From: Carpediemonas membranifera BICM
Taxonomy: Eukaryota > Protista > Fornicata
Direction of reading: 5' to 3'
DNA length: 64,000 nt
Assembly: GCA_019828565.1 (NCBI GenBank)
Contig: JAHDYR010000069.1
Span: 248,001 to 312,000, forward strand
The stretch's first letter is position 1, and every line of letters begins with the position of its first letter. Position numbers and translations under genes: made by a program. Positions 12,333 through 62,595 of this stretch are shown one piece after another. The notes under the pieces were generated by a model. It was not told where the DNA came from. It ran no database searches and saw nothing but the letters and a program-made list of their open reading frames with translations.

Positions 12333-15300
12333 ATGGATTTTGACATGCCACGACGAGCGCCTTGTGCTCTCGACGCAATGGACAATCTCTGGTACCCAGT
12401 CCTTGGCATACCGACTGGATTCTTTCTCACAGAGAGAGATGAGGCTGTTTCTAAGCTAAAGAAGACTCTGGGCGTCTCTGTCGTCGATCTAGGCGAGGTG
12501 TACTTCTTCGCAGCACTCAAGCTGGCATATGCAGTGCCAATGAGTCTATCTAAGCTCACGATGACCAATGTTATGTGCATCTTGAAAGACGGCGAAGAGC
12601 GCCACCACCTAATCATTGGCGAGCCACTCATTACACTAACAGGCGCCGTCAGCATTCAGATGTCGTGCTCAGACCTCTGTGCTGGCTTTCAGTCCCTCTG
12701 CGAGTGGGAGAAGGCGCGCTTTGGTCGGCCGACGACAACACTATCAATCGAACAGTCTTGGCTCATCTCCTCACTCGGCACGCTGACTGGCGACATAGAA
12801 GCGCTGAACATGTGCATGGAACAGGAGGAGATGGCGTTCAATGATGCACCCCCCTGCCACTTCTTCTTCCCTGGCCCAACCCTGCTGTTCGCCAATGCCC
12901 CACACTCGGCTGACGGCGAGACCCTCAGCGCATTCTTCACGGAGCATCTCAAGTGTCGTGTGGTCAGTTGCTTCACCATGCCTGAGCCAGCCGGGGCAGG
13001 AGTCCTCATCCTGCCACTCGCCGAGGACCTTGAGGCGTTGCTCGGCAACCTGCCACCTTTCCAAGGACGCCAGCTTTTCCTGATGCCTCTCGGGCACTTA
13101 CGAGCCTTCCCGCCCTCTCTCTTCGTCAGCGGCGCCCCCAAGGAGGCCATACTCACCTGTCCCGCCCTTCGCACTGAGCGTCGGGTCGCTGACTTCGAAG
13201 CCGAGGGTCTTGGTCTTGTTATCATGTATGACTCGGCCGAGACTGTCGAGTCAATCGAGCAAGACATGTTCTTCTCGCCCGAGGAGTTTACAGATGGGCA
13301 ACACACACTCGCTGTCGATTTCTACAGGGGCACGCCTGAGCGCATGATGGTCGCCCAAGACGTCGAAACCGTCCAGGATCCCGACCCAGAACCTGAGCCA
13401 GAACCTGAGCCCGAGAAGACCTACAGCTCACTCGCCCTCGACACCAGAGACGTCTTCCTCATCGACCGCGACTCGCTCCTGTTCATGACCCGCACCGAGT
13501 TCCCCCTCTACCGGACCGACTCAAACACCAGGCCGACCCTCATTGGCGTGATGGCCCACACACTCGGATGTATCCAGGCCGAGGAGTACGTCACAGCCAA
13601 GGGGCCAGAGCGTCTCATGCCGTCGAGGATGCGGAACTATCAGTATAGCATGGCCGACATCGACGAGTACGGCATGCTTGCGCACTTTCCCGAGGGCCAC
13701 CTCGAAGGGTCAGTCCGCGTCCAGCAGCAGGACTGCCTCGTGGTAGTTTCCAAGCTCAGTAATAAGCACCCTGGGGAGTGTATCGCGTGCCTCAACATGG
13801 CTAATGAGACCCGCGTCGGCGGGGGCTACAACACGGGCGCCCGGGCACAAGAGGAGGAGCTCATGCGCCGTACCACTCTCTCGTTTGCCCTCGACAAGCG
13901 CACCGCTCAGTTTTCGAGCACTTTAAGGACTGACTATCCCGAATACCCGTGGGTCTCGGACGTCGTCTTCACGACCGACGTGGAGCTCTTCAGGAAGTCC
14001 ACCGTGAACCAATACGACTTCATGTCCCGCCCCGTCAAGTTCGGAGTCGTTTCAACGGCAGCAGTCCAGAACCCGGCGACGATCAACCTCGGAGGAACTG
14101 ATTACCTCAGCTGCGAGGAGGATTCCACCCTCCTCACCCGTAGGATACATATCCTGTTCCGTGCGTGCATCAAGCACGGGGTCCAGCACCTCGTGCTGTC
14201 TGCCCTAGGGTGTGGCGCCTTCAGGAACCCCGTATGTCACGTCGCCTGGGTCTTCCGTAATGTTTTGCCACTCTACCGCCAGCACTTCAAGAGTATTACC
14301 TTCGCCATCATGGGTGATAACTTTGATCCATTCAAAAACGTCATTCTTCGAGCCGGACTCAAGAAGTTCACTGAGCCTCTCGATTCACGCTTTGATCTGA
14401 AGTACAAGTGCAACAACCCGAAGTGTCACCTTCGCGGCAATTTGGCTCACGAGTCATGCCTCTTCCACGTCCAAAAGTGCCCCAATGGCGTCAAATGCCC
14501 ACTGATTGGCTCAGACACACGCGAGGGGTCGGCCCACAACGCCCTTTTCACCCACCCCATTGTCCGGCCATGCAACAAGGGCGGCGAGTGCAAGGATTTC
14601 AGCGAGGACCACTGCGACCTGTTCACACACCCGCCCGACTGCAAGTACGGCGGTATGTGCAATGAACTGGCCGACCCGGTCCACTGTAAGAAGTTCCGTC
14701 ACCACGAGCAGCATTGCCTTTACGGACCGATGTGCACTAAAGTGCTCGATCATGCCCACTTTGAGTCGCACGGCCACGGGATTGTAGCCGCCAAGCCGGG
14801 CGACGAGCACAGCCTGGTCGACCCAGACAAGTCCGGTCTCCACATCTGCCCGTACGCCTCGAACTGCCAGCATTTCCAGAAGTTCCTTCAAGGCGATGAC
14901 AGTGCTGAGGTCCACAAGCACATGGCAAAGCATGTCCACCAGTTCTGGCCCGAATGCAGACACGGCGAGGGCTGTACGAGCAAGAACAGCGCGCACTACG
15001 ACGAGTTTGCCCACCCAGGCTGCCGCAAGTCCCGCTTCCCCTGCCGCTACGGCCTGGGATGTCGCGACATTTCCGACCCAGCCCACCTCTGCAAGTACGC
15101 CCACCCCGTCCGTGACGTTCCATACGCCTCGTTCACTGCCAATGAGCGCGTGTTCAAGCTCTCGTTCACTGAGAACGTCAAGCGCGTGCTCGAGCTCCAA
15201 AAGTCGTCTTCCTTCGTTTCAAAAGTCCACCCCAAGACACTGGTGACCATCTTCGAGCTCATCTCCCAGCTGAGGCCGACCCACAGATGTAATGCCGAGA

Positions 15301-37576: not shown

Positions 37577-37931
37577 CACCGATGGCGAATGATTCTGCAT
37601 CAGTGCCGATTCTGCTAAGCACTTGGCCCAAAGTCGACATCACAAATATTCCGAAAGAGAGACATGGGCACAGTACGATGGTATACGACACGGATATGAC
37701 CCTTTACAGGGCAGTGCCCCATATTCTCGAAGTTTTTATGAACTGGGAAGGCGGAAGAAATTCTGTCTGCTGCCACCTTAATCACCTCAAGTTTAAGGCG
37801 ACTATGAACAGTCTCTGATTGTAAACATCCGTGTTGCTTGTGTGGCTTCTCAAACTCGCTCATTCATCAGTTGATTTTTGATGTGTTCAGTTTCTCAGAC
37901 AAACCCAAGCTCTTCATCTTCGCTCTACGCC

Positions 37932-40900
37932 ATGGCAGAAAGCGGAGAAGGCGAACATTTTTCGGATAACCGTCTATTAGCTATCCGAAGATTCGTATGC
38001 AAGAGCCTCGTGGTTGCTGAGTCGGTTTTCGACGAAGCATACCACAAGGACCAAATAATGGTCGATAATTTCCTCAACAACATGCACCAAGCGATCCTCG
38101 TGTACAGAGATTCCCTCCCAGAGTCACCAGATGAGTGGATTGTCCAATTTGGCGTCCCAGGCCCGCGCGAGTCTTCTCTCAACGTCCCCGATGTATCCTC
38201 TGGCACCCAGCTCTGTTACTTCATGAACATCACCGACGACGTACTCCCCGACACCGACGCCTTTGACATGGACGACTGCCTCGTCTACGGCGTAGTGTCG
38301 GACTCTTTGATCTCCACGCTCAACAAGCTCGTCAACGATGTCTACCTCCCCCTTGTGGCCGCCACACGCGAGTCTAGCGGCCTTACCGTCTATGCTGAGG
38401 CCCAGGTTGCTCTCAACAAGCTCGCCTCCCAGCTCTCCCAAGTCACTCGCGACGTCGGCCGCGTCTCCCTCTCGCCGCCTATCAAGATCGCCGACCCAGC
38501 CGCAGTAGACAACGACACCCTCACAGCGATTACCGAGACCGTGAAGGAGTGGACCGGAGTTGTCCAGAACCAGCTCGACCTCCTATCAGCCCTCTCAATC
38601 CCCGCGGAAGACGGGCCCACTGCTGAGATCCTCCTATGGCGCGAGCGTGAGTCTGGCTACGGTGCCCTGTACGAGGCGCTGCACAAAAAGGATGCCATGG
38701 CCATGGTGAAGGTTCTCTCCGCAGAGGACGAGATCGTCTCGCACCAGTTTGCCACGCAGCTGTCAGAGCTCAACAAGCGGTATACCGAAGCCCGCGACAA
38801 CGTCCGATTCCTAGGCACCCTCGAGCGCCACTTCAAGCTGCTCGAGACCGAGACCCGCCTCGGCGCCATCTCGGAGTCTCTCACGAGTCTGTTCAGTGCA
38901 GTGAAGATGGTGTGGGTCATCTCCCGCTACTACAACACTGATGACCGCATGGTGCCTCTGCTCGAACGCACAGCTAACCAGATCGCCAGCCGCGTGTCGC
39001 AGGAGATCACGCTGACCTCAGTAGTCTCCCAACTTGAGGGTAACGCCGCTGGTGTCGCCGAGCAGGTCTCCGAAGCCCGTGATTTCCTGAAACAGTGGCA
39101 GCGCGCTTACGCTGAGACCCGCAAGAAGATCGAGGACGACGGCAGGTCCCAGCGCTGGGAGTTTGATCGCTCCCGCCTCTTTGGTCGCACCACATACATC
39201 GCCTCGCGGTGCCAAGACCTCCAGGAGATGTGCGTGCTCTTCCAACAGTTCACCTCGGTCATCGGCATGGACAACATCCCCCCTGCCGAGCTCGACGCCT
39301 TCTCCAGGGAGATCGACGCGCTCTTTGACCCGTTGTCCGAGTTCATCAACGCCCCGTCGGTTGCAGAGGCCGATGAGAAAGTCGTCAAGGACGTTTTCGA
39401 CCCCAACGAAAAGGCAGCTTGGGAAGCAGCCTTCGCAGCTTTCAAGAACCGCGCCGAGAAGGCCAAGGCGACCGTCGAGCATATCATTGACACCGCCTTC
39501 GAGCGCCTGACCTCTGTCGACTCGGCCATCGCCACGCTCACCAACATGCTCGAGGGCAACCGCATCGTAGACGAGCGAATCTCCCAGCAGATCGTGGAGA
39601 TCGTCTCCCAAGTCCAGCAGACTGTCGCCGCAGCCGACGCAAAGTTCGAGCAGTTTAAGGCAGGTCCACCCACCCTTGCGTCGGATGCCCCGGTGTCTGG
39701 CAAGATCATCTGGGCTCGCCTCCTCTTCCTCCCCGTCGCCCAGCTCTACCGCCGCCTCGAAGCACTCAACGAGGCCAGACGTAACCTCTTTGACGACGTC
39801 CCAACATACCAGCGGTTTAAGCTCGAGTACGACCGGCTGAAGACGAAGATCCGCGACTACCAGGGGGATCTGTTCAAGACGTGGAACAACAACGTCGGCC
39901 AAGTGACGGAGCTGAACCTCCAGCGGAACCTGCTCACGTTTGCCGACGATGAAGCCTCAGTCGACCCTTGGGAGCGGGGCATCGCAGTCAACTTCTCCGA
40001 CGACCTCCGTACGCTCATCACCGAGTGCCGCGCCCTCCTCCGTCTCGACTTCAGAGAGTCTCTCATCAGCGAGCTCGTCAAGGCCGTAGTTACTCGCTCC
40101 GAGTACTACTACTCGTTCAAGGACCAGCTGCAGGAGATGGTGACCTCGTACGAACGGCTCATGGCCCGACTCAAGCCCACGTTCAGAGAGCTTCTAGAGG
40201 AGAAGCTCAAGGAGCTCCATGCCGTGATCGAGCCCGGACTCAGGGACATCAACTGGAACTCACTCAACATAGGCACGTTTGTGGCCAAGTGCAACGCCGC
40301 CATCGTCGGGCTGACCAAGATTGTGAACCAGCTCGAGTCAAGCGATGCCAACCTCGAGGTCCTTGTCAGTGAGATCGCACGCGGTACACTGATCGCCAAG
40401 GTCGCTGGCTCTGGCGCCGTCGTCCACTCGGCAGACGTGCCCGAGATCGCTACGTTTGCTGAGGAGGCACACAAGCAGATCGAGAAGACCACGAAGCGAC
40501 TCGTCACAAAGTACGACGAGATGACTGGCATCCTCGTGAAGATCGAGGAGTCTGTCACGGGCACCACGGGGGGCCGTTCCCCTGCCATGGGCTCGTACTA
40601 CCTCCACTGGCAGGAGCGGGTCCGCGTGGCACTCGCGACACTTGTATCCAGAGCCATTAACACGTTTAACAACAACTTGAAGGCCCCTAGGCGGGAGACG
40701 GAGGACCTCAACGTGCCTGTAGCCCCGCCGCTGTTCCGCATCGACGCCATCCTCGTCGCTCCGTCGATCCTCCAGAAGCCGAGCACTGAGGACATCCGTA
40801 AGACTCTGACCAAGGTGCTCAAGGAGATCGTCAACACCTCAGCCGAGTTTATCCGCTGGTACGACGGCACGTGCATCAGGTGTGAGCTTCCCAAGGCCGG

Positions 40901-43900
40901 CCAGCCGTTTGTTCCCGTGGACGCCGCCCAGCCTAAGGAACGGGAAAGCCCCTCCCTCTCGCGCCAGTCCTCCCGCTCCCAGATCGGTGGGCAGACTAGC
41001 CGCGGCCGCATCACCCAGCGCAACAGTTCGCAGCGCCTCACGCTGACCAAGTCGGGCACCAAGTCGAAGATCTCCGTCAGCAACATGCGCATTGCCCCCG
41101 CCGTTGCTGCCCCCGTCCCTGCGATCAACTACACCTTCTTTATCGACGTCAGCTCGGACCCGAGTGTGAATGAGGCTCACCTCAAGACGAATCAGATCAT
41201 CGAGGACGCCATCAAGCTCATTGAGAGCCACCTCAAGTCCTGGGCCAGCTTCAGAGGGGTGTGGGACCCCTCCCGCCCCCAACTCATCGAGCACTGGGCC
41301 CATGAGCCCCGGAGCGTGACTGAGATTGACTCGAAGCTCAACTGGTACGCCCGAGTCGCCCCTACACTCAAGAGCTCGTTCCCCGGTAGCAAGCCAGTCG
41401 GATTCATCCAGGTGGACGTCTCTTCGCTCATTGACGGCATCCAGGAGGAGTCTAGGAAGTGGGTCGGCGCGCTCGGTGAGCTCATTGAAGATCAGCACAA
41501 GGCAAGGCTCGCGGCGTTTGAGGAGAAGATCGCTAACTTCGAGGAGGCGCTGGCCAAGGGCGAACGCATGTCTGGCGCGCAGCTGGAGCCTCTGAAGAAG
41601 CTCCTCGGGGCCATCAGCGAGGTCTACAACGAGGACAACAACGCCGAGCTCGAGATCCGGGACCTGACATATGCTTACGAGACTCTCCAGAACTACAAGG
41701 CGGGCAACCCGGACGAGATCCAGCGCGCTCTGGCCCTGCCCGCTCGTTGGAAGGCTCTGAAGGAAAAGTCAGCGACCGTGAACAAGTCTCTCGACGCTGT
41801 CCGCGAGAAGTTCCGCAAGGACACCAGCAAGCAGGCCAAGCGATTCGGTGACACCATCCATGCTTTTGCCGAGCGTTTCGCTGAGATGGACCCCAGCAAC
41901 ATCGTCGAGGGCACCGATGAGGAGATGGATCGCGCCGTCAAGGCCCTCGAGAAGCTCAGCACCGAGGTCCAGGAGCTCGAGGCCGAGAGAGACAACATCA
42001 CGCTCGCCCAACGCCTCTTTAACGATGCGCAGAGCCAGTATACAGACCTCAAGGTCATCGAAGTGAAGCTCGAGCGCACTACCCGCATCTTTGACGTCTA
42101 TAACTTCGTCAAGAAGAAGCTGCTCGACTGGTCGGACGTCGCATGGTCGAAGCTCGACATTGCGGTCCTCAACGACGGAGTGAAGGAGATGGAGAAGATG
42201 GTAGTGCAGCTCAAGGGTGGCCGTAAGAAGGGCGAGGCCCCCTCCGAGCTCGCCAAGTCCCCCGCCCTTGCCGCGGTCGAGACCAAGGTCCAGAACTTCA
42301 AGATGTCCATTCCCCTCCTCCAGAAGCTCACAGACGAGGCCCTTCGCGACCGTCACTGGACGAAACTCATGGAAGTGACGGGCAAGACGTTTGACAGGGA
42401 CAACATGACAGTCGGCTCGCTGCTTTCCATGGAGCTACACAAGCACGACGACAAAATCAACGAGATCCAAGCGTCCGCCCAGAAGGAGTTCAGCATCGAG
42501 AAGGGGCTGGCCGAGATCGAGGCCGTCTGGGCGAAGACGAAGTTCGAGCTCGCCAAGTACACCAAGGGCACCACTGATCGCGGGTTCATCCTCAAGTCGA
42601 TCGACGACATCCTCCTGACGCTAGAGGACAACACGATGAACCTGCAGACGATGAGTAGCTCTAAGCACGTGGCAGCGTTCGCCCAGGAGGTGCACCAGTG
42701 GGAAGGAAGGCTCACTCTCATCTCTGAGGTGTCCGAGCTCTGGATTGCCGTACAGAGGAAGTGGATGTACCTTGAGTCGATCTTTATTGGATCAGAGGAC
42801 ATTAGACTCCAGCTGCCGGAGGAGGCACGGAAGTTCGACAAGATTGACAATGATTTCCGTAAGGTGATGACCGAGACAGCGACCAACACGAACGTCCTCC
42901 AGGCATGTAGCGCTCCCAGCCGCCTCGAGAAACTCACCATGCTTGCTAACCAGATGGACAGCTGCCAGAAGAGCCTGTCGGAGTACCTCGAGACCAAGCG
43001 CTCGGCCTTTGCCCGGTTTTACTTCATCTCCGACGACGAGTTGCTCTCTGTTCTCGGTGACTCGGACCCACGTGCCGTGCAGCAGCACATGATCAAGCTG
43101 TTCGACAACACCAAGCTCCTCACCTTCGGCACGGGCAGCAAGGCCTCTACCGTCATCGGGGCACAGTCAAGCGAGGGTGAGACCTTTACCCTCAGAGAGC
43201 CCGTGCTCGCAGACGGACCAGTGGAGTCTTGGATGACGGCGGTCGAGCATGCGATGATCTCTTCAATCCACCAGACCACCAAGGAAGGGGTGTTCCACTA
43301 CGCCCAAAAGGACCGCATCCAGTGGATCTTCGAGTGTCTGGCCATGGTCACGCTCGTAGGCTCCCAGATCTGGTGGACTTGGCAGGTAGAGGACGTGTTC
43401 AGGGCTGTGGCCGAGGGGGACAAGCACGCCATGAAGGTCCTCAGCACGAAGCTTCACGCTCAGATCACGGATCTCGTCGCACAGGTGCGCAAAGACTTGT
43501 CTAGAGGCGACAGGTCGAAGATCAACACCCTCATCATCATAGACGTCCACGCACGCGATATAGTCGACCGCTTTGTCCGCGACTCCATCCTCCACGCCGC
43601 CGAGTTCGATTGGGAGTCCCAGATGAGATTCTATTGGGACCGTGCACGCGATACAGTCATCATGCGCCAATGCACCGGTTCCTTTGACTACGGGTTCCAG
43701 TACATGGGCCTCGCCTCCCGTCTGGTGATCACGCCTCTCACGGACAGGTGCATCATGACCCTGACTCAGGCCTTGACGATGTATCTGGGCGGATCTCCCG
43801 CCGGCCCCGCTGGTACAGGTAAGACAGAGACCGTCAAGGATCTCGCCAAGCACCTTGCGCTTTCTTGCGTTGTTTTCAGTATGTTTACCCTTGAGTTATT

Positions 43901-44272
43901 CGAACACTAACACAGATTGCGGTGACGGTCTGGATTATAAGGCTATGGGCGTCATCTTCTCGGGCCTCTGCGAGACGGGGGCCTGGGGTTGCGTTTGTAT
44001 ACTAATCATTTGATTACACAGTTTGATGAGTTCAACCGTATCGAGGCAGAGGTTCTTTCTGTCGTCTCTGCGCAGATCAAGAACATCCAGACTGCTCTCC
44101 AGCAGAACCTGACGCGATTTATCTTTGAGGGCCGGGAGATCAAGCTTGACTCCAAGTGGTACGTCCATCAACGACCAAACTAACACAGTGGCATCTTCAT
44201 CACCATGAACCCCGGCTACGCTGGCCGTACCGAGCTGCCCGACAACCTCAAGGCGCTCTTCCGACCTGTGAC
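37932..44272 (+). CDS. DNAH10: Axonemal dynein heavy chain, DNAH10/I1-alpha-like: N-terminal ~2,080 aa only (tail, linker, AAA1)
   Basis: [39 protein letters not shown] and [10 protein letters not shown]; P-loop [15 protein letters not shown]. Introns 43879-43915, 43993-44021 and 44159-44188 restore VFNC, GAWGC|FDEFNRI and KC|[28 protein letters not shown]. Dynein similarity ends at donor GTTTGT (44273). Confidence 0.9.
43879..43915 (+). other. Spliceosomal intron, 37 nt
   Basis: GTATGT...ACTAACACAG; removal restores dynein VFNC. Confidence 0.95.
43993..44021 (+). other. Spliceosomal intron, 29 nt
   Basis: GTTTGT...ATTACACAG; removal restores WGCFDEFNR. Confidence 0.95.
44159..44188 (+). 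other. Spliceosomal intron, 30 nt
   Basis: GTACGT...ACTAACACAG; removal restores [11 protein letters not shown]. Confidence 0.95.
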
Positions 44273-44486
44273 GTTTGTTCCCTTTTCCAGCTCCTGTCTG
44301 GCGTCTTATGCAGTGATGGTAAGGTATCTCACACAGTGAAACAACAACTATGTAACAACATCAATGGGTGGCTGCTGGGGCGGGGTGGTAGGCTGGGTAT
44401 GCTGTTGGGGCTTATTCCATGCAATAGTAGTGGTTTTTATTAATCCGTGACTCGACTCCACGACACCCTTGTGTCGAATTTCGATC

Positions 44487-44644
44487 ATACTTACCATTGG
44501 AGGCCATATGTCCCTCAAGAACGACGTTGGCGATCTTGGAGTGCTACACGTTTGTGGTTGGTGCACCTAGGTCCTCGCTGGCTGGTCTAAGGCCTGGCGA
44601 GATCCTCTTATTTGTTCCAGCGGAGAAGGCGTTCGCGCCGCTCC
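44487..44644 (+). ncRNA. U1: U1 snRNA
   Basis: 5' end ATACTTACC. Helix H is GAGG(44500-03)/CCTC(44604-07). SL1 (44504-44530) has the 10-nt loop CCTCAAGAAC. SL2 spans ~44532-44573 and SL3 44574-44601. An Sm-like TATTTGT precedes SL4, GGAG-AA-GGCG-TTCG-CGCC-G-CTCC. Length ~158 nt. Confidence 0.9.
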
Positions 44645-45116
44645 TACCCCCCAACTAACAACATCAAATGTCCCTTAAACGCGCTTTAATACTTGTGAAC
44701 AGTCGTCAGACGTAGTCGCTTGCTGTAATGCGGCATTGTTTCCGCTCATTATGAGGGTATTAGCGTGATTGCATAAGTCCAGAGACATACAAGGGCACTC
44801 TTGCTTGGCTGCGGTAAAGTTCCTCATTGGCGCCGCACCTCATCTCAGCAATGCTGTGTGAATCTTCAGTCTTTCAGGCATCACGGAGCTCTGCCCAGCG
44901 ACTCACACCCCGGAGTGACGAAACCTGGTAAAGACGTGTACCTCCTATGCCAACGCTACATCCCTGCATCCGCCATAAACACAATAATCAGCTCGAGGGC
45001 AACACCGCAGAGTCAAGTGAGTCAACTTGCGCCGCAAAGACTCAAGCCCGCAAAGAAACAAAGGGTCCTGAGGACGAAAAGTGATCCTCTAGACTTTGAC
45101 CGTCGTTGACCTGGAT

Positions 45117-45305: not shown

Positions 45306-45377
45306 CGACTCAGATCATGGCCGCAGGATAGCCTTCAAGGTTTGGTTTCCTCACCTGTAAGGTGCTATTGGACGCTG

Positions 45378-48233
45378 ATGCTCCGCCAATGGCTACTGGT
45401 CTTCCTTCTATATGTATTCCTCGCGGAAGGCAAGACCAACGTTTCTATTGCTGCGCCTGTTTCATCCGCAACCTCGAACTTCCAAACGCTTGCAGCGCAG
45501 TTCAACGCTGCTCAGAGCGACATCGAGGTCACTGTGACCCTTATTCCGACGACTGTAGACTACTATCACACCATCAAAGGAGCGCTGGTCCTCGGGGACA
45601 TCACATTCGACGGCATTGCCTTCGGACAAGTTCATCTGCTCGAGATGCTCCTAGCTGGCGTGGACTCCGCCTCGAACTCGGATGAATGGAACCTAGAACC
45701 GCTCACGGCCCGTGTAGCAGCGTCTCCCTTGCTCGACTGGGACGGCATCAACCTCTTCACACGTTCATACGGCACAAACTTCAACAAGGACGTCTACTTG
45801 GTGCCATTTGACGGCGACTACCACCAGCTCTACCTCAGGGAAGACGTGCTGGACTACTACGGCCTGGCTGTGCCACGCTCCATTCCCGAGCTCGTCGAGG
45901 TTGCTCGGGCACTTAGTGCAAGCGATATGGCGGACAACAGCAGTATGCCAGATGTCGCCTTTTGTGTGGGCGATGGCACAAACCTGCAGCGATTCGTCAC
46001 GGACTTTACGATGCCTTTCATCCAATATGCTGGCACGGCCCAAGGAGGGTACTTCACCACTGACGGCATGGTCAATCTGTTCAACAACGCAGGGTTCAAG
46101 GCGGGTGTGGAGGCCTTTAGAGCCATGCTGGACAATGGCTACGAGGACATAGAGATCGCCTCGTCCAGAGAGGCGTTCCTCAACGGAACCTGTGCCATCA
46201 CGATCGACTGGGGCGATCTACTCTTCTCAGCGCCACGCTCGGCGGTCGAGGGGGTAGCAAACCACACTGTGGCCATGGTCATGCCGGGGTCAACTCGAAT
46301 TTATGATCGCGACTCTGGGAGGTCAGACTTGGTCGACTGCACGGCCACACTATGCCCGTTCGCCTCGGCAAACAGCAGAGGTGACCTGGTCAACACAGCA
46401 CCACTTGCAAGCCATGGCGGATGGTCGATCGGTGTTCCCAAGATCGCCTCCCACAAGAATGAAGTCTTCGCATTTCTCGAGTGGGCTGCCTCCCCCGACG
46501 TAATCAACCCAATAACGCTCCAAGGGTCGGGATTTGAACCATTCAGAACTTCTGTGGCCGCCAACACCACTCTATGGGACGTGGCGGGATTGTCGGTCGC
46601 GAGAGATTGGATCATGGATGTGTTGGACACGATATTGACCGCTGGGAACGTCGCGCTTGACATGAGGTTGCCGGGATACAGTGATTATGTCGCTGTAATG
46701 GAACAGAATCTACGATCGTATCTATATGATGGCGAATCCATCGACGTTGCGCTGTCGAATCTGGATCGTGAGGTTGAGGCCGTGACCGATAGATATGGAC
46801 GAGACATGCAACTGCTGTATTATCGCATGAATCTCAACGTGAACCCGCTAACCACCCTCACCCTCGACCGGATTTACGGATTATTCAGCATGGCATGTAT
46901 AATTGCCACTGCCGCGGTAATCATCATCACCACCATTTGTGTGGTTTTCTTTGGATTCATCATGAACGACGGCAACTTTAAGCTCGCCTCGCCCAACTAT
47001 CTGATTCTCGGCAATGTCGGCTGGCTCACCGCCACCGCGGGTGTGGCGTTGTTTGTATGCTCTTTCGTCTGGAGCTCTACTCTGCTGTGCATCAACACGC
47101 TTGTCTTCATCGGCCTGGGCGTCGCTATCGCCCTCGGCTCCCTCTTCGCCAAGCAGGCCCGCATTTACTGGATACTCAGGGCGACCCGGAGCCATAAGAA
47201 GCGGTTCACGGTCCCCAACGACCTTCACCTACTGCCGCTGCTCCTGGCTGGCGTCCCGCTTCCCTGCGGTCTTGTCATCGTGTGGTCGATACTTGATGCT
47301 TTCAAGGAGTCATCAGTCAAGCTCGGCGACTACACCGCGTGTGTAGCATGTCAGTCGACCCACGCCATGCTCTGGGCGATCGCTGTCGGTCTACTCGCAG
47401 TGTTCTATCTTGTCCCCAACGGCCTGCTCGTGTTCAAAACAAGGAACCTTCCGATATCAGAGACACGACTGTTAAGTATCTCTATCCAGATCTCGGCAGT
47501 GATGTGTACCGTCATCGCACTCGTCTACCTCATCGCCGTTGACCCCTTCGTCATGCCTAAGATTGCACCGCCAGTGTTCACAGTCGGTGTGACGCTGATC
47601 CAGGCTGTTACTTTCGTACCGAAGCTCTGGAAAGCTGTGCGTCGACAGCCGCTGTCTAAGAGGGACTTCAGGTTGCTTACAGGCAAGGGTGATCTCTCAC
47701 TGGATGGGTACATCAGATGCCCTCGATGCCACAGCTGTTTCGCTGCATTCGGGAACCAGATCTCGAAGGATGAGGCGGTCGACGGCGGGTTCAATGAATC
47801 TGTGTCTGGTGCCAGATCACATAGGACACGATCTATCAGATCTGCCCTGTCTAGCGCTGTGTCGTCAGCCATCGTCCCCGCCAAAGCATCGCGGGCTGAC
47901 CCTGAAGGAATGCAGCGGTTCCTAGCATCTCCGTACGCCGATATCGAGCTGACCATGCCCGCTCGGCGCCTGAACCCAGACGCAGCTCCGCAAGATCCCA
48001 CCCCGCCCAGTTCACTGCTCGACAATCGGCTGTTACGGAGAGTTTCGGATGCTAGCTCCGTGAACGGGCCGGTTGACAGTGCGACGGAGACGCTGAGCTT
48101 CTCTGAAGAGGACTCGGGCGAGGCGTTCAGGCGCCCACCGCCCGTCTTTGAGGAGGTGGAGGCGGAGGTGCTCTCGTCCGAGCCTGTCGTGTCGAGTGGC
48201 GTCTATTCGTACGACTCGACTGATCCGATGTAA
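45378..48233 (+). CDS. Sugar-type solute-binding protein fused to a class C (7tm_3)-like seven-TM receptor
   Basis: Signal peptide; SBP family-1 motifs (VYLVPFDGDYHQLYLREDVL, AFLNGTCAITIDW, GGWSIGV); 7TM motifs FKLASPNYL, LFAKQARIYWIL and KTRNLPISETR. Confidence 0.8.
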   Translation: MLRQWLLVFLLYVFLAEGKTNVSIAAPVSSATSNFQTLAAQFNAAQSDIEVTVTLIPTTVDYYHTIKGALVLGDITFDGIAFGQVHLLEMLLAGVDSASNSDEWNLEPLTARVAASPLLDWDGINLFTRSYGTNFNKDVYLVPFDGDYHQLYLREDVLDYYGLAVPRSIPELVEVARALSASDMADNSSMPDVAFCVGDGTNLQRFVTDFTMPFIQYAGTAQGGYFTTDGMVNLFNNAGFKAGVEAFRAMLDNGYEDIEIASSREAFLNGTCAITIDWGDLLFSAPRSAVEGVANHTVAMVMPGSTRIYDRDSGRSDLVDCTATLCPFASANSRGDLVNTAPLASHGGWSIGVPKIASHKNEVFAFLEWAASPDVINPITLQGSGFEPFRTSVAANTTLWDVAGLSVARDWIMDVLDTILTAGNVALDMRLPGYSDYVAVMEQNLRSYLYDGESIDVALSNLDREVEAVTDRYGRDMQLLYYRMNLNVNPLTTLTLDRIYGLFSMACIIATAAVIIITTICVVFFGFIMNDGNFKLASPNYLILGNVGWLTATAGVALFVCSFVWSSTLLCINTLVFIGLGVAIALGSLFAKQARIYWILRATRSHKKRFTVPNDLHLLPLLLAGVPLPCGLVIVWSILDAFKESSVKLGDYTACVACQSTHAMLWAIAVGLLAVFYLVPNGLLVFKTRNLPISETRLLSISIQISAVMCTVIALVYLIAVDPFVMPKIAPPVFTVGVTLIQAVTFVPKLWKAVRRQPLSKRDFRLLTGKGDLSLDGYIRCPRCHSCFAAFGNQISKDEAVDGGFNESVSGARSHRTRSIRSALSSAVSSAIVPAKASRADPEGMQRFLASPYADIELTMPARRLNPDAAPQDPTPPSSLLDNRLLRRVSDASSVNGPVDSATETLSFSEEDSGEAFRRPPPVFEEVEAEVLSSEPVVSSGVYSYDSTDPM

Positions 48234-52105: not shown

Positions 52106-55100
52106 TCAAGGATCGCTATTTAGAGTCCACCAACCTGGGGCGCTGGGCATGTTCGCGCGATATGTCGCCGTGACGGTACCCATCGCTGCAAACGCTGCCG
52201 CTCTTTCATCTTGCGACAGCGTCATCCACGGGGCTCTAGCATTGCCGTCTGACAGTCTGATCGTTCCCACCGTGTCCGGCGAGCACTCTCCCAGGGTCAT
52301 CATCCCCGGAGCGTTTGCCCCAGCGAAGGTGGCGACCTTATTGCTTCGAACGGCGCTCTCAGTGTACATTTCCGGACCATCGCAGACGTTGTCCGGGATG
52401 GAGGCGACGACCTGAGCAAAACTTGGGCGATCTTGCGGGTTGGGGGCCAGGCACTGGGTGATGAGGTTGGCCACCGCTTGGGGCGTGCCGACGGGTATGA
52501 TTGGGCGATAGCCGCGACAGACCTCGACCCGGATTGCATCCAGACTGAATCCTTCGAGACGGTACGGGATGTCGCGCGCGGCGATCTCCCAGAGCGTGAT
52601 GCCGAAGGCGTAGACGTCGGCCTTCTCGCCGCCCACGCCGTCGAAGCGCTCGGGCGCCATCCACGGCCACGAGCCCTCGACGTTTTTGGAGCGCTTGCTC
52701 AGCTTGGTGGTCAACCCGAAGTCGCTGATCTTCGCAGTCTCCTTCGCGACGAGGACGTTGAGCGACTTGAGATCCCGGTGCTCGTAGCCCTCGCCCACGA
52801 TAAACGCCATGGCGATGGCGATCTCCCGCGCAAACTTCAGCCGTGTGTCCCAGGGCAGGTCGGCCTTCGAGAGCAGCAGCGCCGAGAGCGACCCCGACGC
52901 GAGCTCGAGCGCGAGCCTGATCTCGCGGTCACCTTGCTCAAGGGCATACAACGCGATGACGTGCCTGTGTCGCAGCTGCTTGTGGACGAAGATCTCACCC
53001 TGCAACCTGGCTGCCTGGACCGCGTTCAGGCCAGTCATGTCGACGACCTTGACGGCACACTCGCTGCCGCCGTACATGCCTCGGAAGACAGACGCCATGC
53101 CGCCCTGGCCGATGCGGTCGGTTACCTGGTGCATGATGCTTCCTGCAGGCTTGGTGATGTCCGCGTTGAGGCGTGAGCTATCGACAAGTTCATCCGCACC
53201 GTGGCTCAAGAGATAGACCAGGTGTGAGTTCTTACGGGCTACATGGGCAGCCGTCTTACCACGGAAGGAGAGCGTCGTGTCGGCACCGTGTTTCAGGAGG
53301 AGGGTGGCGGCATGAATGCTGCTAGTCTTGACTGCGGTGAACAGGGGCGGAGTGGTCGTCCCGTCCTTCGCCCCATCCACTGGCGCTCCTGCCATGAGCA
53401 GAGTGTCAGCTAGCTCCAAGTCACCATGGGCGATCGCCTTGTTGAGTCGGCGAGTCAAGATTGAATCGACTCCGTGGCGAATGAGACGAGTCATGAGCGG
53501 GTCGGCGACGGACTTCACCGCCTGTACGGCGTTCGTCCCGACTGAAGGGAGGAGGGGGTCGGCGCCGTTGTCCAGAAGGAACGTCGCAGAGTCCCAGTGG
53601 CCGCCCTGGATGGCGAGTACGAGGGCAGTTGTGTTCCGGCTGACGACGTTGACATCTACCTTTCTGACCTTCACCAGAGTCTCGAGCATCGCTGGCTTCG
53701 CCACGGCCCCGAGAACAGGAGGCCCTGACGGGAAATCGAGGACGCACTTGGCCTTGAGCAGCAGCTCGAAGACATGACCCTGGTCGCGGTCGAAGGCCAC
53801 GTGGAGGGGCGAGGAGCCGGCCCGGTCACGGATATTGGCCACAACAGCGCCGTAACGCTTGTCCTTCAGAGCTTGCTTCACCTTGCGGACGTCGCCAGTC
53901 GCCACTCTTTCGAGGAAGACGTCGCTCCGTTCTAGTGCCTCCCGAACCTTCCCGCGGAGGGCGGGCATCGGGTCTTTTGCCATGGATCGGGCGGGCTTGA
54001 GTCGTTCGAAGTCGGCCCCGACCTGACCCAGTTGTGTCGCGTGCTGCTTCACTAAATCAGCGAGACGGTCGGGGGATAAAACGGTGTGAATGAATGAGAG
54101 CAGTCCCTCAGTCTTAAGGAGGTCTGCCTCCTCGTAAAGGGCGCGGTCGAGGGCCACCATCTGGTCGGCAATTGAGTGTCTCAGCTTCCATCCCTCAAGA
54201 GCTTTCCACTCAAGCTGAAACTCATCCAGCAGCTTGGCCAGGGGAGTTCCACTGTCGCCAGTGACTATTAGCCCACTCCAGTGGACGGTGTCGAGGGACA
54301 CTGTGGCTGGCGGGGTTGTTACCATCCTGATCTTGATGCTCTCGGGGACCTCATCAAACTTCTTGATATGATTGAGGATACGGACGAGATCGTCGGTGCG
54401 ACACCCAACCCACTGTTGCGGGGGGTCGACGTGGATCACGGTCTGGGCTGTTATCGGGTTCTTACAGATCTGGTCGACCAGCTGGCCGAGCCTGCGGATG
54501 TTCAGGGGCAGAAGAATCTTCCCAATCTCGTCAATCATTTGATTAGTGGTAGTAAAAAACTTGTATGGGTCCAACACCACCGCAGTTCTGGGGAAAGTGA
54601 GCTGCATCCCGAATGAGTTCAGCTGGAGGCCGTTATTGACGACCGCCTTGGTGATGTGCTCGATAACCTGCGTCAGATGGCCCAGATCGGCCCCAGAGTG
54701 CGGTGGGAACCAGAAGTTGATATCAGAGCTCACCGGACCTGAGCAAAAGCCGGTAACAAGACCGTTCACGCGACACTTGTTGAACAACACGATGAGCCCG
54801 AGCACGTCAGGACTGCGCGACTCAGTCACGAGGAACTTGCCCCGATCCATGGTGATAGTCGCAGCGGGGTGGGTCAGAGTGACAGTCAATGACCGCGGGG
54901 CAGTGTTGGAGGCGAGTATGTGGACTAGAATGCGGGCTAGGTCGTCGAGGAAGACAGGCTGGTCGCTGCGGATGGTGATGTCAGTGGTACGCGTGACGTA
55001 ACGACGGCAGGTCTGGTCAATCTCGGCCGAAAACTGAGCTGACCGCGCCTGAGTGTCCCAGAGCTTGGCCGTGCCGTCACCAGAGCCAGAGGCGAGGGTC

Positions 55101-56426
55101 TCCCCGTCCGGGGAGAATGCGAGTCGCTTGATGACTCGCTCATGGCCCTTGAACTCACGGCTGGAGCCATCAGCCAGGTTCCACAGTCTGATCGCCCAAT
55201 CCCAGCCACCAGATGCCAGGCGACCGTCAGCGGAGAACGCGAGACAGTTCACATATCGCGCATGGCCGGTCAAGGATCGGATATGTTCACCAGTTTTCAC
55301 AGACCAGAGTTCGATAGCATTTGTCGCAAAAGAAGAAGCTGTGGCAACAAGCTCACCGTCTGGCGACACCGCCAAGCAGTCTATGCCGCGCCTGGTGTAC
55401 GCATCGAATCCTATGACCCTTACCTCGTCATACGACTCGGCCGACCAGACCCTGACTCGACCGTCCATGCCAGCTGACAATAGGATGTTGTCAGAGACGA
55501 ACTGGACGCATTTCACGGACTTGTTGTGGCCTTGGAACTTGTGTGAGAGGTAGCTTTGGCCGCTGAGAACGCGTTTGACTGTACTGAAACTGCTGACGCG
55601 CCACAGTTTGACTGTCTTGTCATCAGAGCATGAAGCGAGAGTCTTTCCGTCAGGGGAGAAGGCGAGGCCACGCACCCAGTCGTTGTGGGCCTCTAGAGCT
55701 ATGACTTGGCGGCCGCTCTCGAGGTCCCACAGCTTGATCGTCTTGTCTCCAGCTGACGCGACCGTGGATCCGTCAGGAGAGATCGCGATGTCACAGATAA
55801 ACCCACCGTTGTTCATCCAGGACCTATGGGCACCCGACTCGGCGTCCCACACGGCCAGCATCTTATCCTTGGAGGCCGTCACGACCCGGGTAGAGTCAGG
55901 TGTGTATGCTATGGCGACCACTTCATTACTGTTGCCGGTAATCGTCCTTATACAGTTGCCGGCCCTGGAGAAGCCTCTGCGGTGGCTTAAGTTCCAGGCA
56001 GCGAGGACGAGGTCGACCTGGTTGTGGCGAAGAGTTGCCACGAGCTCGCCGCTGGGGTGTTGGAGGGAGACGGTCACAATGGGGCTGGTGAGGGTCATGG
56101 TGAAGCTTAGAGGCTTGATTCTAGCGGAAAGGAGATGAGTGACAACGCGTTCCAGGTCTGTGATGGTGAGTGGCGTCTTCTCACGGGGGATTAGTCGAAT
56201 ATGAAGTGGTGGATTGTGGGCAAAGAGCTTGGATAGCTGGTCATCAATGAAGCTGCAGTTCTTGCTGTGTGAGAGGCTGCGGATTGGACGGACCATGGAC
56301 TGGATAACGATGGAATCGATGAGCGTACGTCTCAGAGGAGCTGTGTGGGAAAGTGATCGGGGAGAACGAACCATCTATGTAAATAACCACTGGATGCGGT
56401 ACAAACAGCGAGCAATGTCGCCTCAT
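52106..56426 (-). CDS. C4 zinc finger, novel repeated domain, WD40 propeller, ankyrin repeats and TKL-type protein kinase; four 5' introns
   Basis: Exons 56426-56407, 56374-56372, 56340-56329, 56299-56294 and 56264-52106. About 7 WD repeats; ankyrins (GSSPLHVA, TTALVLAI, PPLFTAV); kinase motifs GQGGMASV, AVK, HRDLKSLN, DFG and WMAPE. Confidence 0.85.
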
Positions 56427-58710: not shown

Positions 58711-61700
58711 TTATAATGGCCCTCTAGCGTTGCCGTTGACCCAATTCACATGGTCCCTGATCCCTTCCCACATCGTCTCAACATACCCGTCCTGCCGCGT
58801 GGCAAACCGGTACTGACTCGCCACAAACTCGTCAAATACTGGGCGATCGATTGTAGCCGCCCTGATGCTTTTGGGCTGGGGCGCCATCGGATCGTACGAG
58901 TAAAGTGGCCAGAACCCGCAGCGTACGGCACGTTTCATGGCCGGCAGGGATTGTGACAGACCACCGCTGAGCTTCCAGTCCTTGCACGGGGCGAGGGCAA
59001 CGAGCAAACTCGGACCAGGGTACTCAAAGGCGCGTCTCATGCATTGTATCGTGTGCAACGGGTCAGACAGTGAAATCTGAGCGACGTACGCGTTGGTCCC
59101 GACGTACTGGCGGGCAATCGGGTCTGGCCACCGCACGGCAGAGTCTGTACTGCTCGTCTCGTACTGCCCGTCTGCTATTACTAGCCGGACCCGATCACTC
59201 CGGTTCATGGCGTGCATGATTGAGGACTTGTTTGCCCGTGCCCAGCGGTCACTGCCTGTCGTGACGACCTGGACGGGCTCGAGGAATGATAGGAGCTTCT
59301 TGATCACACCCAGGGCCCTAGCATCGGGGGAGAAGAGGTCGTTGTTGTCGTAATACGACTCGATCAGCTCGTGCTGGAACACGTGTGCCACAAAATCGTG
59401 TATATCGCGTGCGTGGTCAGGATTATCGCCCAGGGTCAGCCACCGCCGCAGGGCTGGTACTAGACCCGAGCTGATGTCCGTGAGCATCGGTGTGGGGAGG
59501 TAGGCGTTCACCCCGCCAGCCTGGTAGTATGGGTTCGACGAGGACTGTGTCTCCACGAGCGTGTTGATCTGCCGCGTAAGCTCGGCCCGGACGTGTGCGA
59601 GCCTGCTTACAATACCCATCGCGTGCTCCATGGCGTTGCCCGGGGTTGACCTGGTGAAGCACGGGGCGGTATCCGCAGCGCTGACGTCAGCCTGGAGGGC
59701 ACTGCTGTTGACCGTGGCCAGGTTGGAAGTGATGCAGCCGTCTGAACCGACGAAGATGACGTTACTGCCGACGAGCTGGGTGAGGAGCTTGAGGTAAGCA
59801 GGGATACCACAGCCGGGGCACGAGTTATCGGACACGTAAAGAGGTCTGAACAGCTGGCTCCCTTCTACTGTGTGGCGAAGCTCCGTGATGTCCTCTAACG
59901 AATACTGGTCTGCCATAAAACTGCCCTCCTTGAGCTTCGAACCCACGTACCCGAGTGACCTCGCCCTTTCCTTGTTGGACTTGGCGTCTGGGTCAGAATC
60001 GACGTGAATGGGTGTGAGGCTGTCAGTCGGACAGGCCTGGTAGCACACGCCGCACTCAGTACACAGCTGCTGGTTGACCTGGACCCTGAACATGAAGCCT
60101 GGATCACTGATGGGCGGCCTGGAGAGGAGTTTGGCTGGTAGACCGATGAATGGCCGCTTGCTCTTCTCCTTGGGGTCCGCCTGGTACCTCTTGCTCGCCC
60201 TGAAGTCGGCGTCGTCCTCGTCCTCCCTCCAGTGGATTATCCGGAGAGCCCCATGGGGGCAAGCGAGGCTGCACTGGTAGCACTGGGTGCAGAACTGGGG
60301 CAGCCACGACGGCACGTGCTTGGCCATGGACTCGTACGCCCTTCTGAGCTCGCCCCCGCCCAGCTGGCCCTGCTCGGACATGATATGGCCGCGGTCGCCG
60401 TACGCCATAGCCTTAATATCATCGACTAGGGGGGCCTCGATGTTGCCCGCCTCTACCATCTCGGGCCCAACGTCTGTGGAGGACGCGGCGGCCCAGGAGA
60501 CGGGCGAATACTCGACCTCGCGGAAGATCTCGTGTGCGGGGACGTCGCAGAGCGTGGTACCCGCAGCCCTGGGGAGGATGGCGTTGCTGGCCATGGACAC
60601 CACCGTGGCGTTCTCGATCCGCTTGTTCTTAAGACCCGTCGAGTCTCGTGGGAGGATATCGAGCAGGGAGGTCATAAATGTCCCAACACTGTGCATGGTA
60701 GCCGTTCTCTCTGGCAGGTGGCGCCAGATCGAGTGCGGTTGGTCGTATTTGCCCAGGAAGAGGCACACACAGGCTGTGGCCATCGCCGTGCTCTGTTTCC
60801 TGGGCGATAGGCCACAGGCGCGGTTGATGGCTCCGATGTCGATGGCGTAGAGCTTGGCATGGCGGTCTGCAATGATTTTCTTGAATCGGGGTGGGAGCAC
60901 CTTGTCAAAGTCGGTGTCCGGCTTCATATTGATCACAACAGTGGCGCCCTCCTTGATGTAGTCAAGATATTGGAGTTTTGTCAGATATGGCAAATTGATC
61001 CCGACAAAATTGGCCATACCCCGCTGCATGTAGGGGTCGTCGTGGGCCGTGTGGCCGATGTGGAGCAGGGTAGCGCACTGGCCTAACGCCATACGCTCGT
61101 CGCTCTCTCTAAACTGGTGGGTCACACGTAAATCCGTCGTGCGGTCGACCATCTTCGCCAAAGCACGCGATACAGTCTTCGTCCCGTCAGCCCCTGTTCC
61201 AAAGAACATGATGTCCACCCCCTCTGCATCCGAGAGTCTTAGGGGCGGGTCAGTGTCGTTGTTGACGATGCTAAGTGACTCAAGCCCGACTGCATTAGCC
61301 AGGCCGACCGAGATATGGTCCATAGGCTTGGGAAGGGCCATGTTCTCGAACAGGGTGAGTCCGTTGCGGGGCGAGAGGGTGTGGCCGCCGATGCCATGGG
61401 TCGCCCCGAGGATTTTGACGTCTGCCTTGCCAGCCCGCACCATGGCCTCGAGAATATCGTAGTAGAGGGGGTTCCTGGGCTGGGAGGGGGTCTCCAGCGT
61501 CCTGTCGAGCACGGTAATATGCTCCAGCCCCCGCATCATCTTGAGCCAATAAATGAGGTAATCAAACGGGAACGGACGGTACAGCGACACGGTGAACAGC
61601 CCGACCCGCCTGTCGCCGTGCTTGTTCATGTGGTTGACCACGCGTTTGAGTGTCTCTGTGCAGCTCCCCATTCCGATGAGGACGTCCTGAACCTGGGTGA

Positions 61701-62595
61701 TCGGTGCGCCGTAGTACTCGACCGGGTCGTATCGGCGGCCTGTGGCTCGGCCAAAGCGTTCCATGACGTTCTGGACGCGTTCGGGAGCCCGGTTGAACCA
61801 ATCGTTCGCGCGTTCGAAGCCGTGGAAGTATGTGTCGCTGTTGCCGATGGTTCCTCGCATGGCAGGGCGAGAGGGGGATAGCCGCTGCTCCATGAACCCG
61901 TCCAGTATCTCCCTGGGCATCAGCTCACGAAGAGATACCTCGTCTAGCATGGAAATTTGCTGGGTTTGGTTGAGAATCTTTGTCCCGTCGAAGAAATGGA
62001 GGAAGGGGAGGTGGCACTCGACAGCGGCGACCTGGCTGAGGATGGCGAAGTCGTAGGCCGACTGGACGGACGTGCTTGACACCATGGGGATCCCGGTTGA
62101 CCGCACGCTCATGACATCACTGTGGTCAGGAAACATTGAGGATTCCTGGCGAGTAATGGCGCGGGAGGGGATGTTGAAGACTACGGGGAGGCCGTCACCG
62201 ACTATACGGTGGAGGACAGGGGCTTGGAGGACGAGGGCGTCGCCGCAGGTGATTGAGGAGACGAGAGAACCGGTGGTAGCGGCACCGTGAATGCAACCTG
62301 CGGCCCCTAGTTCGCTTGGGAGTTCGTGAACGTCGATTCGATTGCCATAGCAGTTGACGCGAGGATTTCTCGTGAACGAACGGGCGATGTGATGTGCAGG
62401 CGTAACTCGCGAGTGGATGATCATCTCACTGAACGCACTGGCAGCATGGGATATCGCCTCAATCCCTGTCACCAAAGATGGCAGGGAGGCGTTGTCTTTC
62501 ATGATTTGTGAGGCCGTTTTGGTAATGACTTTAAAGTGCTCCTTCTTGGCATGGTACCCAACTCGAGAAATTATGACGACGCACGTGTCTGACAT
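58711..62595 (-). CDS. PFO: Pyruvate:ferredoxin oxidoreductase homologue, highly divergent
   Basis: SELGAAGCIHGA, DHSDVMSVRSTG, PFLHFFDG, LYRPFP and GTGADGT; ferredoxin motifs CTQCYQCSLACP and CTECGVCYQACP; CPGCG, LAPC and GFWPLY. Confidence 0.9.
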   Translation of the reverse strand: MSDTCVVIISRVGYHAKKEHFKVITKTASQIMKDNASLPSLVTGIEAISHAASAFSEMIIHSRVTPAHHIARSFTRNPRVNCYGNRIDVHELPSELGAAGCIHGAATTGSLVSSITCGDALVLQAPVLHRIVGDGLPVVFNIPSRAITRQESSMFPDHSDVMSVRSTGIPMVSSTSVQSAYDFAILSQVAAVECHLPFLHFFDGTKILNQTQQISMLDEVSLRELMPREILDGFMEQRLSPSRPAMRGTIGNSDTYFHGFERANDWFNRAPERVQNVMERFGRATGRRYDPVEYYGAPITQVQDVLIGMGSCTETLKRVVNHMNKHGDRRVGLFTVSLYRPFPFDYLIYWLKMMRGLEHITVLDRTLETPSQPRNPLYYDILEAMVRAGKADVKILGATHGIGGHTLSPRNGLTLFENMALPKPMDHISVGLANAVGLESLSIVNNDTDPPLRLSDAEGVDIMFFGTGADGTKTVSRALAKMVDRTTDLRVTHQFRESDERMALGQCATLLHIGHTAHDDPYMQRGMANFVGINLPYLTKLQYLDYIKEGATVVINMKPDTDFDKVLPPRFKKIIADRHAKLYAIDIGAINRACGLSPRKQSTAMATACVCLFLGKYDQPHSIWRHLPERTATMHSVGTFMTSLLDILPRDSTGLKNKRIENATVVSMASNAILPRAAGTTLCDVPAHEIFREVEYSPVSWAAASSTDVGPEMVEAGNIEAPLVDDIKAMAYGDRGHIMSEQGQLGGGELRRAYESMAKHVPSWLPQFCTQCYQCSLACPHGALRIIHWREDEDDADFRASKRYQADPKEKSKRPFIGLPAKLLSRPPISDPGFMFRVQVNQQLCTECGVCYQACPTDSLTPIHVDSDPDAKSNKERARSLGYVGSKLKEGSFMADQYSLEDITELRHTVEGSQLFRPLYVSDNSCPGCGIPAYLKLLTQLVGSNVIFVGSDGCITSNLATVNSSALQADVSAADTAPCFTRSTPGNAMEHAMGIVSRLAHVRAELTRQINTLVETQSSSNPYYQAGGVNAYLPTPMLTDISSGLVPALRRWLTLGDNPDHARDIHDFVAHVFQHELIESYYDNNDLFSPDARALGVIKKLLSFLEPVQVVTTGSDRWARANKSSIMHAMNRSDRVRLVIADGQYETSSTDSAVRWPDPIARQYVGTNAYVAQISLSDPLHTIQCMRRAFEYPGPSLLVALAPCKDWKLSGGLSQSLPAMKRAVRCGFWPLYSYDPMAPQPKSIRAATIDRPVFDEFVASQYRFATRQDGYVETMWEGIRDHVNWVNGNARGPL

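What the first reader, a model, noticed from the sequence alone, without database searches (positions are those of the whole stretch)
44189..44365. Dynein heavy chain ends at a dangling splice donor: candidate trans-spliced (split) intron
Seen: the intact, stop-free DNAH10-like gene stops at ...[10 protein letters not shown]|GTTTGT (44273), the same donor hexamer used by confirmed introns in this window. Dyneins continue here with a M-x-VPD-type motif and roughly 2,400 more residues (AAA2-6, stalk), and none of that is in the following 19.7 kb, which holds U1 and unrelated genes. The two nearby acceptor-like sites give non-dynein tails: TTATGCAG at 44313 gives TDGKVSH...GFY*, and CTCACACAG at 44336 gives TETTTM*. 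Established: Giardia builds dynein heavy chain and Hsp90 mRNAs by trans-splicing split introns whose halves base-pair. Inference: this is the 5' half of a split intron in another lineage and another dynein paralogue. Alternatively the motor is made as two polypeptides.
Basis: partly seen in the sequence, partly recalled or inferred. Interest (0 to 1): 0.9.

Follow-up and report, generated by a model that had tools for sequence, protein, structure and literature searches.

The report
Split dynein gene joined by trans-splicing
In a free-living relative of Giardia, one flagellar motor gene lies in two halves on different contigs, each ending in half an intron that can base-pair with the other, so the cell most likely stitches the two RNAs together, a trick so far described only in Giardia.

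Summary
Observation confirmed and extended. The genome is Carpediemonas membranifera. The window holds the N-half of inner-arm dynein I1-alpha (DNAH10), ending at a phase-2 donor at 44273. The missing C-half lies mid-contig on another contig (C8, minus strand), behind an acceptor followed by one base and M-V-V-P-D; the halves meet with no gap or overlap and no intact DNAH10 exists. The two intron halves pair (interaction energy -49 kcal/mol against -9.5 +/- 3.5 for shuffles; best of 8,326 genomic tiles). A second Carpediemonas assembly is split at the same base; its intron halves differ in sequence but pair with each other, not across species. A motif TAAYAAYATCA follows the pairing region in both species and follows all 3 U1 and 6 U2 genes, the same layout as Giardia's 3'-processing motif, with different letters. 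Aduncisulcus, GEM-RC1 and 79 metagenome loci are unbroken here. Verdict: Giardia-like split intron, about 0.88; probably an independent origin. I found no paper on it. First-stage notes on another piece of this genome flagged an orphan dynein acceptor.

The parts
37932..43878 (+). DNAH10 / I1-alpha heavy chain, exon 1 (tail, linker, start of AAA1 with Walker A); start codon probable, another in-frame ATG at 37881
   Evidence: DHC_N1, DHC_N2, AAA_6 1-63; best PDB matches are I1-alpha/DNAH10
43879..43915 (+). cis-intron 1, 37 nt, GTATGT...ACTAACACAG
   Evidence: inferred from frame
43916..43992 (+). exon 2
43993..44021 (+). cis-intron 2, 29 nt, GTTTGT...ATTACACAG (same donor hexamer as the split intron)
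44022..44158 (+). exon 3 (AAA1 Walker B)
44159..44188 (+). cis-intron 3, 30 nt, GTACGT...ACTAACACAG
44189..44272 (+). exon 4, last exon of the 5' half-gene, ends ...LFRPV + AC (phase 2)
44273..44352 (+). 5' half of the split intron: donor GTTTGT, then about 50 bases that pair with the 3' half on G000:C8:541604-541521 (minus strand); perfect 15-bp helix at 44334-44348
44318..44336 (+). second donor-like GGTAAG and acceptor-like CTCACACAG inside the pairing region; similar pair in the second species; unexplained
44353..44364 (+). TAACAACATCAA motif, candidate 3'-end processing signal that would end the 5' precursor
44487..44646 (+). U1 snRNA gene (one of three copies); neighbour, not part of the split intron
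44656..44667 (+). second copy of the motif, directly after U1

Best explanation
The DNAH10 (inner-arm I1-alpha) gene of Carpediemonas is split inside one phase-2 spliceosomal intron at the end of the AAA1 large subdomain. Locus 1 (this window, contig C68) makes a precursor with exons 1-4, the donor, a pairing segment and a 3'-end motif. Locus 2 (contig C8) makes a precursor with the complementary segment, a branch point fused to the acceptor, and the rest of the motor. Shown in sequence: both splice sites, the in-frame fit (AC + T = Thr, then MVVPD), the complementarity, its conservation in a second species, and the motif shared with U1 and U2. Inferred: the 5' precursor is cut or ended at the motif by the snRNA 3'-end pathway; the two RNAs anneal through a multi-helix duplex that brings donor and branch point within about 25 nt, like the 29-37 nt cis-introns; the ordinary U2-type spliceosome joins them to give one mRNA for a heavy chain of about 4,630 aa.
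For: Partner found as the only orphan AAA1 C-part, starting at model position 163 where the window gene stops. Census of DHC_N2 and AAA5 shows one unpaired N-half and one unpaired C-half among the well-conserved dyneins. Both halves are I1-alpha/DNAH10; against PDB 8glv_Cn exon 1 ends at 1982, exons 2-4 add exactly 100 codons, the C8 exon starts at 2083. Pairing -49.0 vs shuffles -9.5 +/- 3.5, minimum -20.7; rank 1 of 8,326 tiles, next best interaction -25.8. Second assembly GCA_002919055.1: AC|GTAAGT on one contig, TTACTTAG|T-ATG on another, both with unrelated neighbours; cognate pairing -56.5 and -37.2, cross-species -14.3 and -20.6, shuffles -18 and -12; rank 1 of 266 tiles of its contig. 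Motif: 399 copies vs 4 for the reversed control; directly after 3/3 U1 and 6/6 U2 genes, absent after U6. No canonical GT donor within 200 nt of either acceptor, and upstream ATGs in both 3' halves. Same layout as Giardia (PMC3510501, PMC5224939).
Against: The C-half begins with ATG in both species and the second species' unspliced N-half stops exactly at FRPVT, so two polypeptides would lose no residue there. The donor pairs weakly with U1, though no worse than a cis donor on C8. A simple linear complement score does not rank the second species' partner first; only folding energy does. Many motif copies lie in repeats, so the motif alone proves little.
Confidence: 0.88

Rival explanations
1. 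The motor is made as two polypeptides that assemble after translation: an N-chain ending just after FRPVT and a C-chain starting at its own ATG (MVVPD).
For: The break is at a subdomain boundary; the C-half starts with ATG in both species; in species 2 the N-half stops at FRPVT with no extra residue. Precedents: Giardia outer-arm chain with a separately translated N-part, and basidiomycete cytoplasmic dynein split inside AAA1 in Wallemia (PMC5100056). NCBI annotates the C-half as a separate gene.
Against: It does not explain a donor and an acceptor in matching phase in both species, species-specific complementarity, or an snRNA-type end motif in place of an ordinary mRNA end. N-chain tails differ (21 extra residues vs none). 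Upstream ATGs precede the dynein ATG in both 3' halves. M is the normal residue at that position in DNAH10, so the ATG is expected either way.
Confidence: 0.08
2. Misassembly, or a dead partial duplicate beside an intact gene.
Against: Both breaks are mid-contig (292 kb into 728 kb; 541 kb into 1,032 kb). An independent short-read assembly of another species breaks at the same base with different flanks. No intact DNAH10 in the census. Both halves are stop-free and 75-85% identical between species.
Confidence: 0.01
3. The 5' gene is cis-spliced to a local acceptor (44313 or 44336) and makes a truncated tail-only protein; the C8 gene has a 5'-UTR intron.
For: CTCACACAG at 44336 and ACTAACTCAG in species 2 resemble cis acceptors.
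Against: Tails are not conserved (ETTTM vs R or QKHS...); these acceptors lie inside the duplex; no local donor near the C8 acceptor; it leaves the cell with no whole I1-alpha chain. It may occur as a side product.
Confidence: 0.03

Closest known systems
Giardia trans-spliced (split) spliceosomal introns: Hsp90, outer-arm dynein beta (two), dynein gamma, p68 helicase (PMC5224939, PMC3510501, PMC7641422)
   Same: Coding exons on distant loci; GT donor and fused branch point-acceptor like the species' cis-introns; extended pairing between intron halves; a short motif shared with snRNA genes right after the pairing region; a dynein heavy chain as the target.
   Different: Free-living, intron-richer fornicate outside diplomonads; inner-arm I1-alpha rather than outer-arm chains; motif TAAYAAYATCA(A), not TCCTTTACTCAA (only the first T and last TCAA agree) and absent after U6, whereas Giardia U6 has it; pairing is broken into blocks by hairpins; no RNA proof yet.
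Split dynein genes translated as two chains (Ustilago, Agaricomycota, Wallemia DHC1; N-part of Giardia DHC4) (PMC5100056)
   Same: Heavy chain encoded by two loci; in Wallemia the break is inside AAA1.
   Different: Those have no bridging transcript and no paired intron halves; here both splice sites and the complementarity are conserved.
Spliced-leader trans-splicing (kinetoplastids, nematodes); own knowledge
   Same: Spliceosome joins two RNAs.
   Different: There a short non-coding leader is added to many mRNAs; here a 6.2-kb coding half is matched to one partner by base pairing.

Membership tests
Giardia-type split intron | Two in-frame coding halves of one gene on distant loci, no intact copy | tested here: met
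Giardia-type split intron | 5' splice site like the species' cis-introns at the end of the 5' half | tested here: met
   GTTTGT as in cis-intron 2; GTAAGT in species 2 as in its cis-intron
Giardia-type split intron | Branch point fused to the 3' splice site before the 3' half | tested here: met
   TTTACATAG and CTTACTTAG, A at -6 as in cis acceptors ATTACACAG, TTTACCCAG, CTTACCCAG; branch use itself not shown
Giardia-type split intron | Extended complementarity between the intron halves | tested here: met
Giardia-type split intron | Giardia cleavage motif TCCTTTACTCAA after the pairing region | tested here: not met
   best match 3 mismatches in C. membranifera, 2 in species 2; a different motif holds that place
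Giardia-type split intron | A 3' motif shared with snRNA genes next to the pairing region (functional analogue) | tested here: met
   cleavage at the motif not shown
Giardia-type split intron | RNA reads or RT-PCR across the junction | not testable with these tools
DNAH10 / DHC5 / I1-alpha dynein | Both tail and motor closest to I1-alpha | tested here: met
   N-half 1,090-1,150 bits vs 559 for the next class; C-half 2,250-2,400 vs 1,444; best hits, no tree built
Two-polypeptide split dynein | Separate translation with no bridging mRNA | not testable with these tools
   needs RNA or protein data

The most novel reading that the evidence does not exclude
Split introns arose at least twice in Fornicata from one shared predisposition: a short snRNA 3'-end motif pathway, perhaps homologous between Giardia (TCCTTTACTCAA) and Carpediemonas (TAACAACATCAA), that lets a broken intron end cleanly, plus short fixed-geometry introns that can be rebuilt by base pairing. 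In C. membranifera the dynein 5' precursor may also run on into the adjacent U1 gene, so that cleavage at the first motif frees a U1 precursor.
Probability: 0.3. Interest if true: 0.9.

Novelty: new variant of a known kind. Interest (0 to 1): 0.82.

Why it matters
Base-pair-guided trans-splicing of coding exons as the only route to an essential protein has been described in Giardia alone; a screen found none in Spironucleus and concluded that it is taxonomically narrow (PMC5224939). A case in a free-living fornicate, in another dynein paralogue, at a site that is unbroken and intron-free in Aduncisulcus and GEM-RC1, points to a second origin. That makes the long-standing question of how introns fragment comparable across lineages: both use an snRNA-type end motif, both hit very long dynein genes. 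It can be tested at once with public RNA-seq, and it corrects the annotation, which lists the C-half as a separate gene. It also supplies a candidate ncRNA 3'-end signal for Carpediemonas.

Tried and rejected
The spliced model was searched exon by exon only; the joined step was left out. A BLAST-type search with the 5' intron half found only itself, since G-U pairs and bulges defeat it. Plain duplexfold energy did not separate the partner well from background (-78.5 vs -69); interaction energy did. No junction-spanning protein in three protein searches. Ancient intron position: rejected; paralogues have introns a few codons away, not at this site, as does Gonapodya DNAH10; Nematostella, Aduncisulcus, GEM-RC1 and 79 of 80 metagenome loci are unbroken (the last set leans to intron-poor genes). 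Two database proteins that start at the same Met were gene-calling artefacts. U1 as part of the mechanism: not conserved, none after the donor in species 2. U5 not found. Literature searches found no report for Carpediemonas; subscription journals are mostly not covered.

Full report
Observation. The window carries a dynein heavy-chain frame from about 37932 with DHC_N1, DHC_N2 and the start of AAA1. Three 29-37 nt introns restore the frame through AAA1 up to ...LKALFRPV plus AC at 44272. GTTTGT follows, the hexamer that also opens cis-intron 2. Nothing dynein-like follows; next come U1 snRNA at 44487-44646 and unrelated genes.

Organism. The genome is 24.24 Mb in 69 contigs, the figures published for Carpediemonas membranifera (PMC8516963), and the partner protein is annotated under that name, KAG9396016.1.

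The missing half. A whole-genome scan with the AAA1 model lists every heavy chain. One stops near model position 162 (this window, C68) and one starts at 163 (C8:541500, minus strand). Scans with DHC_N2 and AAA5 show that, among the well-conserved dyneins, these are the only N-part without a motor and the only motor without an N-part. On C8 the sequence reads TTTACATAG, one T, then MVVPDLAQICENMLFSEGF. AC plus T gives Thr, the residue found here in other DNAH10 proteins. Both halves match I1-alpha/DNAH10 far better than any other class. Against PDB chain 8glv_Cn, exon 1 ends at residue 1982, exons 2-4 plus the junction codon add exactly 100 residues, and the C8 exon starts at 2083: no gap, no overlap. 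An EF-hand gene ends 350 nt upstream of the acceptor. Both breaks are deep inside long contigs.

Pairing. The 80 nt after the donor and the 130 nt before the acceptor fold together into a chain of helices of about 50 pairs, with a perfect 15-bp helix at 44334-44348 and a 9-bp hairpin looped out of the 3' half. The innermost helix places the donor about 23 nt from the acceptor end, similar to the cis-introns. Interaction energy is -49.0 kcal/mol against -9.5 +/- 3.5 for 300 dinucleotide shuffles. Among 8,326 tiles from 277 kb of this genome the true partner ranks first; the best interaction among the other top tiles is -25.8.

Second species. The closest relatives of both halves come from assembly GCA_002919055.1. 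I take it to be the Carpediemonas frisia metagenome bin (from memory; contig sizes fit; not confirmed by a tool). Its N-half ends ...LFRPV AC then GTAAGT and is followed by flavin-enzyme genes. Its C-half, on another contig behind an unrelated gene, starts TTACTTAG, T, MVVPD. Neighbours are not syntenic with C. membranifera. The intron halves share little sequence between species, yet each 5' half pairs with its own 3' half (-56.5, -37.2) and not with the other species' (-14.3, -20.6; shuffles -18, -12). The second species has perfect 14- and 9-bp helices, and its partner ranks first of 266 tiles on its contig. Kept pairing with changed letters is the strongest argument that the pairing is used, and an independent assembly with the same break removes misassembly.

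End motif. TAAYAACATCA follows the pairing region in both species (window 44353; +120 in species 2) and follows U1 at 44656. It occurs 399 times in the genome against 4 for the reversed control. It or a one-base variant stands directly after all three U1 and all six U2 genes, but not after U6, which ends in a T run. One copy follows a box-D-like CTGA (L062). Many other copies lie in repeats. In Giardia a 12-nt motif shared by ncRNAs and all trans-intron 5' halves lies just after the pairing bases and marks the cleaved 3' end (PMC3510501). The layout is the same; the letters are not. That the Carpediemonas motif ends the precursor is inference. I noticed the motif from the two-species comparison; a first-stage note (s1-530142) had seen the two window copies.

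Expression. Two runs of this organism hold 0.71 and 0.68 of the sampled words of window 42000-45000; exons alone predict 0.69. This fits a spliced, expressed N-half but is indirect, and the runs' type is a guess. I worked beside those places and sent none of their letters to a search tool afterwards. The spliced model was searched exon by exon; the joined step was left out. So the junction is predicted, not observed.

Distribution. DNAH10 runs unbroken and intron-free through this site in Aduncisulcus and GEM-RC1, Nematostella and 79 of 80 metagenome loci; the exception is the second Carpediemonas. Paralogues have introns a few codons away but not here. The intron and its break therefore look specific to Carpediemonas. 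Giardia's split dyneins are outer-arm chains (PMC5100056), so the events are in different genes; an independent origin is inferred, not proven, since Kipferlia and other intermediates could not be checked.

Rivals. Two polypeptides remains possible: the break sits at a subdomain boundary, the C-half opens with ATG, and in species 2 the unspliced N-half stops at FRPVT. It leaves the phase-matched splice sites, the pairing and the motif unexplained, and both 3' halves hold upstream ATGs. Local cis-splicing gives tails that are not conserved. One feature is unexplained: both 5' halves hold a second GGTAAG followed by an acceptor-like stretch inside the pairing region.

Verdict. It works like a Giardia split intron and meets every sequence feature except Giardia's own motif letters; RNA proof is missing. 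No report for Carpediemonas was found in the papers held. New variant of a known kind; probability of trans-splicing about 0.88; interest 0.82.

Noticed in passing
L035 (GCA_002919055.1, PPCM01001278.1), protein P0274 residues 2008-2493: The second species' dynein C-half carries a 486-aa intein (starts C, ends HN before C) in the AAA6 region, absent from C. membranifera; that chain would need both RNA trans-splicing and protein splicing.
   Followed up: partly
window 44318-44336; L032 13593-13611: Second donor-like GGTAAG plus acceptor-like YAC[A/T]CAG in both 5' intron halves; in C. membranifera ATGGTAAG is an 8-nt perfect match to the U1 5' end; in species 2 it reads CAG|GTAAGT like a recursive splice point.
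   Followed up: partly
window 44487-44646; G000:C17:102711 and 111246: Three U1 copies, 98% identical; the two on C17 share an upstream flank that the window copy lacks, so the window copy may be transcribed differently.
   Followed up: partly
L066-L071, L074: Six U2 snRNA genes and one U6 candidate (C39:312760-312855); no snRNA annotation found in the genome paper's text. U5 not found.
   Followed up: partly
L062 (G000:C1:1278461): Motif copy after a stretch with two CTGA boxes: candidate box C/D snoRNA.
   Followed up: no
G000:C6:68204, C6:397039, C6:397091, C54:16231: Donor-like hexamer followed by the motif outside the two common repeat families; could not be cut out; possible further 5' halves or repeats.
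   Followed up: no
L036-L065: Most motif copies lie in dispersed repeats of several families, which may use the same end signal.
   Followed up: no
L032 13599-13610: A 10-of-12 match to Giardia's motif in the second species' 5' half, 26 nt before the Carpediemonas motif; may be chance.
   Followed up: no
window 44364-44410: G/T-rich tract after the motif can extend the duplex with G-U-rich helices; it would be lost if the RNA is cut at the motif.
   Followed up: partly
window 45342-48233: Bacterial solute-binding domain fused to a class C GPCR-like 7TM domain.
   Followed up: no
window 12282-18230: 1,982-aa protein with a microbial-type PARG domain and a VWA domain.
   Followed up: no
window 52106-56374 and 58711-62595: WD40-ankyrin-kinase protein and a pyruvate:ferredoxin oxidoreductase.
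   Followed up: no
G000:C68:402784, C13:826700, C6:547443, C3:390113: Very divergent dynein heavy chains in long open frames, not classified.
   Followed up: no
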